NCBI GenBank assembly: GCA_051294905.1
Contig: CM119384.1
Span: forward strand, 6,262,001 to 6,326,000
Length of the DNA stretch: 64,000 bases
Origin: Botryllus schlosseri
Taxonomy: Eukaryota
Direction: 5' to 3'
Within the stretch, counting starts at the first letter, position 1; each line of letters begins with the position of its first letter. The notes under the pieces were generated by a model that was not told the DNA's origin, ran no database searches, and was given only the letters and a program-made list of their open reading frames with translations. Both the position numbers and the translations under genes were made by a program. Below, piece after piece: positions 15,711 through 63,224 of this stretch.

Positions 15711-18700
15711 TCATTCGCATCTTGGCGTTGCGCCGCTCCAGCGACCCGTGGGTCGGCAAGCTCTCCTTGGGAAACCTATGACCCTACTTCCGCCCTGGCA
15801 AGAATAGGTCGCGACAGATCCTTGCATACGTTGAGCATCGCTATACCTAAGATTTCCATTCGCGATATCTTCAAGGGGAGGACACTGTGCTCTCTCTGAA
15901 TAATATGAAAATGTGTTAGCAACTTGAAAAGTTTCGGGTCTGCACAAGGGACCGAAGGCCTAACTTACGTCTTTGGCATCTCGGTTGCTGACCAGACCAT
16001 TGTCCGTTTGATTGGCAACTTCTAGTGGCCGTACCACCTTGAATTTCGAATCGGTTGCGACAAGTGTAGGTAGCTGTTGTGCCTGGTGTGAGATCGTTGC
16101 TACTGTATTGGACCTGTCCGTTGTTGATGCCGCTGAGGGTACTGCATTTGGCTGAAAAAATGGACAGGATATCATACATCAGGTCATTGTTGCGGACCTA
16201 AAACTAAACTGAACCAAACGAAGTTTGTGGTAAGCTTATTGTGTGCATCGGGACTCGGCAATAAGTAGATGTGATATTCACAAATCAAACTTGACTTACA
16301 TTATATAATAATCATTATCATATAATCATAATCATACGTTCAAGACACACAATGTGCACAAGAAACATAGGAGGATGTCAAAACATCCAAGAGTGGTCTA
16401 TCAATCTCGGCCTACTGGTATTAAGCAGTGTTGGGATGAGTCTAGTCTATCATCTTTTGACTTGACTTGAGTCACTTTGCTAAAATGACTTGACTTGACT
16501 TCGGGTATCAGAAATATCGATTGACTCGTGACTGGGAGCAAAATTCACGAGTCAATTTCAAGTCATCAAATAATCGGTGTCCATAAAAATCACTGCACCT
16601 TGCATATGTTCGGATTGTTCGCGAAACGCCGCTGTAACCCGTGTAAGCAACCAATCATTCAATGATTGCGTGTTTTACTGAGCCTCCATTGCTTTCTCAC
16701 AAATGAATTGACCGAAGCTTACGTTGTCTTGAACTATTATAGTAAAGTAATTTAATAGCAAAATGTTTATTTATGGTCTCTGTTCTTACCTTAACCAAAC
16801 CTCTTGTTTTATTAAAATTGAGGATAGTTTTTATAGTCTGTATCTGTATTTCAGACAGCTAGCAAAATGCAATGACGGCATCATGCCTCATGCTTCGAAA
16901 GGGCAACTTGACTTGAATTGTGACTTGACTCGACTTGACTCGAGTCACCCCCAAAATTTGAATGAATCGACTTGACTCGAGTTACCTTTGATAATTGATT
17001 GACTTGACTTGACTCGAGATGCGCAATGACTCGAAATGACTCGTGACTCGAAGGTAGTGACTTGATCCCAAAACTGGTAGTAAATTTTATTTTGTCACTT
17101 TCATTCGCTTGTATTCGTCGTCAATCAGGTCTTTCTCTCTGCTTTTTATGATTGTTGATATACAATGTTCTTTTCAAATCACTAAATCATTACTAGTTAA
17201 TGACGATTACCCCTGACGAGTGTCAGTCGAGAATATTCATGTCTATATTAACATGATATATTGTCTAATTGCATATTGAAGTTCTTTACTCCCATAAGTT
17301 TCTGGTCGTTTTTTGTAATAACACCCTAATAACAGCGACACAGGTGATGGGGTTCAAAGATCAACCTCCAATACTACGTGCTACAACCGAGACTCTTACC
17401 GCAGTCTCTCGTGTTGATGGCTGTGGATTAACCAACTGGGTTAATTTTTGATTTGATAGGCTTGATTTTGGATCAGTAGCTCATGTTTCAAAACCGAATA
17501 GCGTGTCGTATTGGTAATAATAACCTGAACTGAGTAGGACACCGTGCAATAAATCTTAAAATGCGTCACTGGAAACAAATTTATAGCAACAAACAAGCAA
17601 TAGGAATATTCAATTTGCATCACACGCATTCCCCGCAAGACTGCGAATTCTGACGTTACAGTTTCTCGTCAACTTTACAATTTGTAAACTTACTTTGTTG
17701 CTCCGCAACGCATTCCGGTTGCTGCCCTGACCATTGGCCGTTCGCCTGGCAAATTCTCGTGCTGCTACCTCTCAGGGTGTGTCCCGGATTGCAAACGTAT
17801 GTCGCGGACGTGCCTTGCTGGAGTTCGTTGCTGCTGTACTCGACTCTGCCGTTTCCGATATCATTCAGTCGGTTGCATCGCACTGTGATTGCATGGACAT
17901 TTAATATATGACGCTATAGATCAGATGATTCTATGGATGATTTTGTGCTTTCTACACAGGTGTGGTCAGAATAGTCAGTAGAAGCAATGCTCTACATTCC
18001 TACTGAAGTACAAGTTCAAGTAGAGATGTCCAAGACAGCCTTCCAGTGGAAGTAGAAAATTTCTGACAAGTGCTTAATCGAGGGTTCACATGCCTATTGC
18101 CGGTAACCAGAGTTGGCGACTTTCGAAATTGCAATATGTTTTTTCGCGACTAAAGAAAAACGTCTAATTTCACTACTAATAGGTGCTATCTTCCAATATA
18201 TATATTTAGTTACGATGACACAGGGGCTATTTCGAATGGTTTCTATGACAATCTCACCCAAAAAGGTGATGCAAACTCATGCTAAAACTATTTCCTACTT
18301 TTCAAAATCCAAATCACATTTAGTAAGTAATTTTACCTGAATATTTTTCTCGTTTCTAGACATTCACAGTAACAAAAGTCAAGCTTGAAAATCTTTCATT
18401 TTCAAAATTCACTCAAGTAGAGAGTACTTTTTGCATCAATCTCACAAATTCGTATCAATGAATTTGTCTTTAATATCGGACGGCGGTTTTGAGTAATTGT
18501 TAGTTGCACTGACGCCGTTCAAGCTTGGAATAGCAAAAATAATTGTCAACAAAGTCTCAGATGCATTGTCTCTTGTGCACTTTCCGAGTTTGCCGTTGCC
18601 TATGTCAGCTTGGATTGCGCCTATCAGTATGAAAGCATTGAACTTGAGATATCCTTACCTTGGGCACGTTCACACCTCGGCTCTTGTCCAGACCACTGAC

Positions 18701-63224: not shown

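What the first reader, a model, noticed from the sequence alone, without database searches (positions are those of the whole stretch)
15711..63224. A >5,800-aa secreted mosaic protein with a domain order I cannot match to a named family
Traced order: (EGF)14-TY-(EGF)8-TY-(EGF)4-TY-(EGF)2-TY-TY-[EGF-TIL-EGF3]-EGF-VWD-C8-TIL-TILa-like-[EGF-TIL-EGF3]-(EGF)15-CCP-(EGF)3-CCP-EGF-CCP-(EGF)31 with QPG tracts-(CCP)5-stop. That is roughly 90 EGF-like, 8 sushi, 5 TY and 1 VWD-C8. Established: VWD-C8-TIL defines gel-forming mucins, zonadhesin, FCGBP, tectorin and sea-star Sfp1, but I do not recall any of them combining TY, sushi and an EGF polymer. Inference: a lineage-specific fibre- or gel-forming protein (mucus feeding net, tunic, egg coat or adhesive).
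Basis: partly seen in the sequence, partly recalled or inferred. Interest (0 to 1): 0.8.

Follow-up and report, generated by a model that had tools for sequence, protein, structure and literature searches.

The report
Giant sea-squirt EGF/VWD/thyroglobulin-repeat matrix gene
The window holds most of one very large sea-squirt gene for an extracellular protein built from about 87 EGF, 8 sushi, 5 thyroglobulin-type and one mucin-type (VWD) module; it is real and transcribed, and it is an unusual variant of giant VWD/EGF/sushi proteins already annotated, but not studied, in other sea squirts.

Summary
On the minus strand I rebuilt a 77-exon model (63224 to 15711). Every splice site is AG/GT and nearly all exons are phase 1-1. 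It reads 5,811 codons (630 kDa, 10.9% Cys) with a single stop at the end.

Pfam confirms VWD, C8, TIL, Thyroglobulin_1, Sushi, EGF and EGF_3. Spliced RNA contigs from three runs reproduce five of my junctions, including the 3,004-nt intron that joins a sushi exon to the 6,147-nt 31-EGF exon.

Two corrections:
- The gene is 5'-incomplete. Its first exon in the window opens at a phase-1 acceptor and I found no signal peptide. A note on the neighbouring window suggests about 4,000 more residues upstream.
- The architecture is not unmatched. Styela clava XP_077974758.1 (35+ EGF, 7 VWD-C8-TIL, EGF_3, sushi) and Ciona XP_026696704.1 (SUEL lectin, 2 VWD, about 29 EGF/sushi pairs) are 35-44% identical relatives.

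None of 275 retrieved relatives carries a thyroglobulin repeat, so that part seems new. Function is inferred: a secreted structural glycoprotein. A link to the S. clava thyroid-hormone precursor ScTG-like is possible but could not be tested.

Other first readers of this scan noted parts of this gene on the same DNA (s1-270922, s1-270963) and on the overlapping next window (s1-268373).

The parts
57656..63224 (-). 14 single-EGF exons. The first two are EGF_3 type, the rest Notch-like ('NPCEPNPC...GMMYTC'). The first exon, 63224-63087, opens at a phase-1 acceptor, so the gene continues upstream.
   Evidence: Pfam EGF on 61347-61231; tandem arrays of 194/387 nt
57352..57594 (-). Thyroglobulin type-1 repeat 1 (one exon)
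   Evidence: Pfam PF00086 6.8e-18; PDB thyroglobulin and saxiphilin matches
55449..56875 (-). 8 EGF exons (tandem 182/375-nt array)
55123..55371 (-). Thyroglobulin type-1 repeat 2
   Evidence: Pfam PF00086 1.1e-18
54137..54819 (-). 4 EGF exons
53811..54059 (-). Thyroglobulin type-1 repeat 3 (near copy of repeat 2)
53170..53511 (-). 2 EGF exons
51123..51653 (-). Thyroglobulin type-1 repeats 4 and 5 (exons 51653-51453 and 51383-51123)
   Evidence: Pfam PF00086 1.4e-11 and 1.8e-08
48244..50487 (-). Cassette 1: EGF (50487-50365), TIL (49512-49330), three EGF (49109-48993, 48551-48426, 48366-48244)
   Evidence: Pfam TIL 1.2e-07; 85-90% identical, introns included, to cassette 2
47630..47755 (-). 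EGF exon before the VWD
44753..46795 (-). VWD domain in three exons (46795-46527, 45768-45616, 44922-44753). Carries the motif [13 protein letters not shown].
   Evidence: Pfam VWD 5.9e-11 and 3e-06; splice sites read; RNA runs hold 0.25-0.27 of the words of 44300-47900, and the exonic fraction there is 0.28
41875..44695 (-). C8 (44695-44557 plus the start of 44493-44330), TIL (44493-44330 plus 42158-42037), and a short TILa-like Cys-rich exon (41979-41875)
   Evidence: Pfam C8 6e-07, TIL 0.0017 and 0.00028 on the two halves
38463..40782 (-). Cassette 2: EGF, TIL (39829-39647), three EGF. A segmental duplicate of cassette 1.
32630..38182 (-). 15 EGF in 14 exons: 5 Notch-like, then 10 EGF_3 type (exon 34354-34034 holds two)
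28830..32570 (-). CCP+EGF exon (32570-32244), EGF (31207-31082, 31022-30888), CCP (30151-29972), EGF (29914-29777), CCP (29009-28830)
   Evidence: Pfam Sushi 8e-14, 5e-14, 5e-15; RNA joints 31081|31021, 30888|30151, 29972|29914, 29777|29009 in three runs
25826..28829 (-). Largest intron (3,004 nt). Contains dispersed repeats with very high RNA depth from elsewhere in the genome.
   Evidence: RNA joint 28830|25825 with GT..AG ends in X4, X5 and X6
19679..25825 (-). Single 6,147-nt exon with 31 EGF_3 domains in A/B alternation. Twelve 119-aa units form a 3-unit higher-order repeat at 97-100% identity. Two Cys-free Q/P/G tracts of about 120 aa.
   Evidence: (EGF_3 2.5e-93; Collagen hit 1.1e-07, but at most 7 Gly-X-Y triplets in a row)
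15711..19614 (-). Five CCP exons (19614-19441, 18844-18659, 17882-17694, 16151-15969, 15895-15711) and the stop codon at 15713-15711
   Evidence: Pfam Sushi 8e-11 and 1e-09 on the first and last
15567..15636 (-). Two AATAAA signals 80 and 139 nt after the stop. The gene ends convergent with the hamartin ORF on the + strand.

Best explanation
The window holds the 3' 47.5 kb of one transcribed sea-squirt gene. It encodes at least 5,811 residues of a Cys-rich, non-membrane, multidomain extracellular glycoprotein.

It belongs to a tunicate group of giant mosaics built around FCGBP/zonadhesin-type VWD-C8-TIL units, with EGF arrays and sushi repeats.

Shown: the exon chain, the domains, splicing across 31-25 kb, and homology to the Styela and Ciona giants.

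Inferred mechanism:
- The EGF arrays form long, stiff, disulfide-locked rods.
- Short Pro/Thr linkers and the two Q/P/G tracts give flexible or elastic hinges.
- The VWD, with its conserved GDPH motif, undergoes the Asp-Pro self-cleavage known from FCGBP and MUC2. This could give a reactive end for covalent attachment.
- TIL and thyroglobulin-type repeats add binding or protease-inhibitor surfaces.
- The five terminal sushi repeats dock to a partner.

The product would be a fibre or net component of a secreted matrix such as mucus net, tunic, coat or glue.

The gene most likely continues upstream of the window.
For: - An uninterrupted 5,811-codon frame runs over 77 consensus-spliced exons.
- Pfam supports every domain class.
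- RNA contigs of 943, 3,308 and 3,574 nt in three runs reproduce five junctions, including sushi exon to big exon.
- RNA runs hold exactly the exonic share of the VWD region.
- There is no hydrophobic stretch (maximum Kyte-Doolittle 1.08 over 19 aa).
- Relatives are 35-44% identical and share sub-architecture: an hEGF array before the VWD, EGF-TIL-EGF cassettes, and EGF_3 pairs plus sushi after the VWD.
- GDPH is conserved in the closest VWDs (CKAWGDPHYMTFD in Ciona, [13 protein letters not shown] in Clavelina).
- The first exon opens at a phase-1 acceptor with no convincing start upstream.
- Scan note s1-268373 traces the same exons into the next window.
Against: - No signal peptide was seen, so secretion is inferred from domain content only.
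- RNA continuity was tested for about 6 kb of 47.5 kb.
- The 5' arrays (54-64 kb) are poorly held in RNA runs: 0.05-0.09 of words against an exonic share of 0.37.
- A bulk RNA run of 2026 showed no exon reads.
- There is no CTCK, VWC, ZP or other known polymerising end, so how it would assemble is unknown.
- GDPH cleavage, glycosylation, tissue and partners are all untested.
- The near-identical higher-order repeat in the big exon could be mis-sized in the assembly.
Confidence: 0.6

Rival explanations
1. It is the counterpart, in another sea squirt, of ScTG-like. ScTG-like is the 630-kDa Styela clava protein with dispersed thyroglobulin type-1 repeats that serves as thyroid-hormone precursor. 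On this reading, the protein's main role is as an iodinated tyrosine matrix in the endostyle or a larval follicle-like structure.
For: - PMC12992692 describes ScTG-like as 630.45 kDa, with many repetitive sequences, extensive disulfides, Tg1 repeats dispersed enough that Tg1-rich fragments had to be cloned separately, and a C-terminal region free of disulfides.
- This gene has 5 Tg1 repeats scattered among EGF arrays, 232 tyrosines, heavy repetition, and two Cys-free 120-aa tracts near the C-terminus.
- The in-window mass is 630.18 kDa.
- The paper found no orthologue in any other species.
Against: - The window is not S. clava. The PACSIN-like ORF's best named hits are 53-56% identical, with none from S. 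clava, and the exact sequence is absent from the collection. An S. clava locus has exon/intron GC of 40/32% against 51.5/37.8% here, and none of the 56-77-nt introns.
- My model is cut by the window edge, so the mass match is most likely chance.
- ScTG-like has at least 9 Tg1 repeats. The paper mentions no VWD, EGF or sushi domains.
- The sequence is not held in the library, so homology was not tested.
Confidence: 0.15
2. The chain joins two or more adjacent genes of the same family. For example, there could be a boundary in one of the untested long introns (59275>57769, 53170>51653, 44330>42158).
For: - Only 31.2-25.3 kb was checked with RNA.
- The 5' arrays are under-represented in RNA runs.
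- In S. clava, two annotation releases disagree on whether a Sushi-VWD-VWD gene and the 5,893-aa gene 1.4 kb downstream are one gene.
Against: - No in-frame stop, no terminal or initial exon, and phase-1 continuity at all 76 junctions.
- The likeliest boundary, the 3-kb intron before the anomalous big exon, is bridged by RNA in three runs. One 3,308-nt contig runs 1,897 nt further upstream.
- Single annotated proteins in Styela and Ciona carry both halves of the layout.
Confidence: 0.1
3. Its main job is defensive rather than structural: a multi-headed protease-inhibitor and microbe-binding coat protein. TIL would inhibit serine proteases, thyroglobulin-type repeats would act as thyropin-like cysteine-protease inhibitors, and sushi repeats would resemble complement regulators.
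For: Three TIL and five TY repeats. The TY repeat matches p41 invariant-chain fragment and saxiphilin as well as thyroglobulin. Eight sushi repeats.
Against: These 16 modules are under a fifth of the protein; 87 EGF dominate. In VWD proteins TIL is part of the D assembly and is not known there as an inhibitor (my own knowledge). No reactive-site analysis was possible.
Confidence: 0.1

Closest known systems
Styela clava 'IgGFc-binding protein-like' XP_077974758.1 (5,893 aa; uncharacterised)
   Same: Long Notch-like EGF array before the first VWD (38% identity over 1,425 aa). EGF-TIL-EGF cassettes. VWD-C8-TIL with GDPH (44% identity). EGF_3 pairs and sushi after the VWD. Similar size and Cys content.
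   Different: It has seven VWD-C8-TIL units against one in this window. It has no thyroglobulin repeats, no 31-EGF_3 exon with Q/P/G tracts, and no five-sushi tail.
Ciona intestinalis 'fibrillin-1-like' XP_026696704.1 (4,201 aa; uncharacterised)
   Same: Its second VWD-C8-TIL is among the best matches (41-42%). It is followed by EGF_3 and alternating sushi/EGF, like residues 3,099-3,454 here. It is headed by a SUEL lectin, as the neighbouring-window note reports for this locus.
   Different: Regular (sushi-EGF)x29 instead of EGF polymers. It has a CUB domain. It has no thyroglobulin repeats and no Notch-like EGF array.
Vertebrate FCGBP / zonadhesin
   Same: VWD-C8-TIL(-TILa) unit with a GDPH self-cleavage motif. 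The many top hits carry these names.
   Different: FCGBP has 12-13 tandem units and an N-terminal IgGFc-binding domain. Zonadhesin has MAM domains, a mucin region and a membrane anchor. Neither has EGF polymers, TY or sushi arrays (Pfam lists; the rest is my own knowledge).
ScTG-like (Sc.CG.S284.31) of Styela clava, thyroid-hormone precursor (PMC12992692)
   Same: Giant (630 kDa), repetitive, disulfide-rich ascidian protein with dispersed Tg1 repeats and a Cys-free region towards the C-terminus.
   Different: Different species. At least 9 Tg1 repeats against 5 here. No VWD, EGF or sushi domains are reported. Sequence relationship not testable here.
Sea-star footprint protein Sfp1
   Same: [quoted passage not shown] That it combines lectin, VWD, C8 and EGF-like modules is from my own knowledge.
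   Different: 3,853 aa, cleaved into four subunits. No TY, no sushi arrays, far fewer EGF. Sequence not compared here.

Membership tests
Gel-forming mucin / VWF | Three N-terminal D assemblies (D1-D2-D'D3), plus D4 | tested here: not met
   One VWD-C8-TIL in 5,811 residues. Upstream sequence not readable.
Gel-forming mucin / VWF | Long central Pro/Thr/Ser mucin domain | tested here: not met
   Only four Pro/Thr linkers of 12-17 aa.
Gel-forming mucin / VWF | C-terminal VWC and cystine-knot (CTCK) dimerisation end | tested here: not met
   The protein ends in five sushi repeats and a stop.
FCGBP / zonadhesin-type VWD proteins | VWD-C8-TIL unit with GDPH at the start of the VWD | tested here: met
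   Pfam hits; [13 protein letters not shown].
FCGBP / zonadhesin-type VWD proteins | Many tandem VWD units; IgGFc-binding N-domain or MAM domains and a membrane anchor | tested here: not met
   One unit in the window. No MAM or PF17517 region in any exon. No hydrophobic stretch. The N-terminus lies outside the window.
Ascidian VWD/EGF/sushi giant mosaics (uncharacterised; Styela XP_077974758.1, Ciona XP_026696704.1) | Sequence homology of VWD-C8-TIL and of flanking EGF arrays | tested here: met
   blastp 35-44% identity, bit scores 238-775.
Ascidian VWD/EGF/sushi giant mosaics (uncharacterised; Styela XP_077974758.1, Ciona XP_026696704.1) | Shared layout: EGF array, TIL cassettes, VWD-C8-TIL, EGF_3 pairs, sushi | tested here: met
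   Local HMM maps and Pfam. TY repeats are extra here.
Thyroglobulin / ScTG-like | Multiple Tg1 repeats | tested here: met
   Five PF00086 hits.
Thyroglobulin / ScTG-like | Tg2, Tg3 and cholinesterase-like domain (vertebrate TG) | tested here: not met
   All exons are accounted for by EGF, TY, TIL, VWD, C8 and CCP. No long unassigned region except the Q/P/G tracts.
Thyroglobulin / ScTG-like | Sequence orthology to Sc.CG.S284.31; iodination and hormone formation | not testable with these tools
   The sequence is only in supplementary datasets that are not held.
Fibrillin / LTBP | TB (8-Cys) domains between calcium-binding EGF | tested here: not met
   No TB-like exon. Most EGF lack the D-x-D/N-E calcium-binding start.
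Collagen | Long uninterrupted Gly-X-Y run | tested here: not met
   Pfam Collagen hit 1.1e-07, but the longest run is 7 triplets.

The most novel reading that the evidence does not exclude
This gene is the first recognisable relative, outside Styela clava, of the thyroid-hormone precursor ScTG-like. It would show that the invertebrate 'thyroglobulin' is a thyroglobulin-repeat-bearing member of the endostyle-type VWD/EGF mucus-protein family. That would link the mucus-net and iodine-binding roles of the endostyle in one molecule.
Probability: 0.12. Interest if true: 0.85.

Novelty: new variant of a known kind. Interest (0 to 1): 0.45.

Why it matters
Sea squirts make several secreted structures whose proteins are largely unknown: the feeding net, tunic, egg coat and larval or adult glue. 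Giant VWD/EGF/sushi genes are good candidates for these, but they sit in databases under misleading automatic names such as 'fibrillin-like', 'zonadhesin-like' and 'IgGFc-binding'.

This locus gives an RNA-supported exon model of one such gene. It also shows a combination with thyroglobulin-type repeats that I did not find in 275 relatives.

A giant Tg1-repeat protein was recently shown to be the thyroid-hormone precursor in Styela clava, with no orthologue known. This gene is therefore a concrete sequence to compare with it.

The gene also illustrates how such proteins grow: phase 1-1 single-domain exons, duplicated multi-exon cassettes, and a very recent three-unit amplification inside a 6-kb exon.

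Tried and rejected
- **Self protein.** I looked for it with an exhaustive search of the VWD exon, the big exon and an exact look-up of a neighbouring ORF. None found it, so the genome's annotation is not in these collections and I had to build the model myself.
- **Automatic chain.** My first chain added seven tiny exons, split the big exon and one sushi exon, and missed two VWD exons. I corrected these by hand, and RNA later confirmed the corrected part.
- **Is the window Styela clava?** I tested whether the gene could be ScTG-like itself, after the mass coincidence (630.18 against 630.45 kDa). I rejected this on PACSIN identities, GC content and intron sizes.
- **S. clava candidates by mass.** XP_077974758.1 and XP_039251842.1 are not ScTG-like by mass (645 and 653 kDa) and lack TY repeats.
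- **Collagen reading of the QPG tracts.** Rejected.
- **First exon.** A candidate MIILFICYG near 63.5 kb has a weak donor and a 12-residue leader. I did not adopt it.
- **P0034.** This 81%-identical 94-aa fragment gave no usable DNA.
- **Literature.** Searches for egg-coat, tunic, endostyle and adhesive proteins with this layout found none.
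Full report
**What is there.** Composition and ORF lists pointed to the minus strand, with one open frame of 2,094 codons at 25835-19554. All Cys-rich stop-free pieces on that strand fall between 63.3 and 15.7 kb.

I scored AG..GT exons with a codon table trained on those pieces and chained them by phase. The raw chain had seven tiny low-scoring exons, two false splits and a gap over the VWD. I removed or repaired these after reading the DNA.

The result is 77 exons from 63224 to 15711. 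All have consensus splice sites, and 5,811 codons end in a single stop at 15713-15711. Almost every exon is phase 1-1 and holds one domain. Of the 76 introns, 41 measure 56-77 nt.

**Domains.** Pfam on exon pieces confirms the following:
- VWD in the first and third VWD exons
- C8
- Three TIL
- Thyroglobulin_1 in four exons (57594-57352, 55371-55123, 51653-51453, 51383-51123); the exon 54059-53811 was not scanned and is called by the regex/HMM pass and as a near copy of repeat 2
- Sushi in five exons scanned
- Classical EGF in the Notch-like exons
- EGF_3 with 22 significant stretches in the big exon

The protein has a mass of 630 kDa and is 10.9% Cys and 14% Gly, with pI 7.9. It has no transmembrane-like stretch and four short Pro/Thr linkers. 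There is only one N-glycosylation sequon where about 36 are expected from composition.

The Pfam 'Collagen' hit on the Q/P/G tracts is not a triple helix, because the longest Gly-X-Y run is seven triplets.

**RNA.** Fourteen RNA-type runs of the same organism hold 0.25-0.27 of the sampled words of 44300-47900. The exonic fraction of my model there is 0.28.

I spent the single read-laying run on 25300-31250, the stretch with the longest intron and the odd 6.1-kb exon. Contigs of 943, 3,308 and 3,574 nt from three runs give joints 31081|31021, 30888|30151, 29972|29914, 29777|29009 and 28830|25825. All have GT..AG ends on the minus strand.

These joints match my exons, apart from one acceptor 6 nt upstream of my choice, which I adopted. 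The big exon is therefore part of the same mRNA as the sushi/EGF exons. One contig runs 1,897 nt further upstream.

There are limits to this evidence. A 2026 bulk run had no exon reads. The 5' arrays (54-64 kb) are held at only 0.05-0.09 against an exonic 0.37, and at 0.24 in a DNA-type run. Polymorphic or mis-sized arrays, or lower inclusion of those exons, are all possible.

**The 5' end.** The first exon in the window starts at an acceptor in phase 1. The 776 nt above it hold no convincing start; one candidate gives a 12-residue leader with a weak donor.

I could not read that DNA. I consider continuation likely, which would make the protein close to 10,000 residues with a second VWD.

The 3' end is well defined. 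Two AATAAA signals follow the stop, and the next gene (hamartin) converges from the other strand.

**Relatives.** An exhaustive search with the first VWD exon found no self protein. It found many multi-VWD proteins.

Ranked by the whole VWD-C8 region, the nearest are ascidian: Ciona, Styela clava and Clavelina proteins at 40-44% identity. Pfam and local HMM maps show their layouts:
- S. clava XP_077974758.1 has more than 35 Notch-like EGF, then seven VWD-C8-TIL units with EGF-TIL cassettes, EGF_3 pairs and sushi.
- Ciona XP_026696704.1 has SUEL lectin, CUB, sushi, two VWD units and about 29 EGF_3/sushi pairs.

An EGF polymer plus sushi plus VWD-C8-TIL is therefore an existing, though uncharacterised, ascidian layout.

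In S. clava a Sushi-VWD-VWD gene lies 1.4 kb upstream of the 5,893-aa gene on the same strand, and an older annotation merges them. This is the same ambiguity as at the 5' edge here.

The GDPH motif is conserved in the nearest VWDs. No thyroglobulin repeat was found in any of 275 retrieved proteins by HMM or regex. None of the 120 giant relatives of the Styela protein lists PF00086, although those precomputed lists are incomplete. The big exon has no close homologue among proteins of 1,126-3,584 aa.

**How the gene grew.**
- The EGF-TIL-EGF3 cassette occurs on both sides of the VWD block, with introns 85-90% identical.
- The EGF exon arrays are tandem repeats of 182-387 nt.
- The big exon holds twelve 119-aa units arranged as a three-unit repeat, whose copies are 97-100% identical at protein level. 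This points to a very recent amplification, gene conversion, or an assembly effect.

**The thyroglobulin lead.** A 2026 paper (PMC12992692) identifies ScTG-like in S. clava. It is a 630.45-kDa, highly repetitive, disulfide-rich protein with dispersed Tg1 repeats, shown by in vitro iodination and knock-down to act as thyroid-hormone precursor. No orthologue was found elsewhere.

My in-window model weighs 630.18 kDa. I tested whether the window could be S. clava:
- The PACSIN-like ORF's best named hits are only 53-56% identical (Phallusia, Clavelina, Ciona), with none from S. clava.
- The exact sequence is absent from the collection.
- An S. clava locus shares no repeats with the window. It has exon/intron GC of 40/32% against 51.5/37.8% here, and no introns under 179 nt.

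The window is therefore another species, and my model is cut by the window edge. I treat the mass match as chance. A family relationship remains open and is easy to test once the published sequence is at hand.

**Verdict.** The gene is a new variant (TY insertions, a 31-EGF_3 exon with Q/P/G linkers, a five-sushi tail) of a known but unstudied ascidian kind. Its function is inferred from its modules: a secreted, rod-like, possibly self-cleaving and cross-linking matrix or mucus component.

Noticed in passing
window 4001-5308, 8862-9896, 11239-14001 (+ strand): Three conserved genes each appear as one long intronless ORF: PACSIN-like (FCH + SH3), OGG1 (OGG_N + HhH-GPD) and hamartin/TSC1. The last converges on the 3' end of the giant gene.
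   Followed up: partly
window 21035-25280: The twelve 119-aa units of the big exon form a three-unit (about 1,065-nt) higher-order repeat. Units 2/5/8 and units 3/6 are 100% identical in protein. This could be recent amplification, gene conversion or an assembly artefact.
   Followed up: partly
window 38234-41094 and 47990-50815: The EGF-TIL-EGF3 cassette is a segmental duplicate on both sides of the VWD block, with introns 85-90% identical.
   Followed up: partly
window 26100-27700: Inside the 3-kb intron lie dispersed repeats with RNA word depths in the hundreds to thousands. They show many loose ends and variant letters, so they are copies expressed from elsewhere in the genome.
   Followed up: no
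window 54001-64000: RNA runs hold only 0.05-0.09 of the words (exonic share 0.37) and a DNA-type run holds 0.24. The VWD region is held at its full exonic share. This suggests allelic or copy-number variation, or assembly problems, in the 5' EGF arrays.
   Followed up: no
whole model (63224-15711): There is one N-glycosylation sequon (NRT in the VWD) in 5,811 residues, against 36 +/- 5 expected from composition. The Asn residues sit in fixed NPC/NGG/GNG contexts. Relatives have 11-20.
   Followed up: partly
window 29908-29916: Two acceptor AGs lie 6 nt apart. RNA contigs in three runs use the upstream one (exon start 29914).
   Followed up: yes
L002 (S. clava OZ123523.1, 19.76-19.79 Mb): Three same-strand VWD/EGF/sushi genes sit in a row: 657 aa, 1,120 aa and 5,893 aa. 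An older annotation joins the last two into one 5,920-aa protein.
   Followed up: partly
model mass: The calculated mass of the in-window model is 630.18 kDa, almost equal to the 630.45 kDa published for S. clava ScTG-like. I judge this a coincidence because the species differ and the model is truncated.
   Followed up: yes
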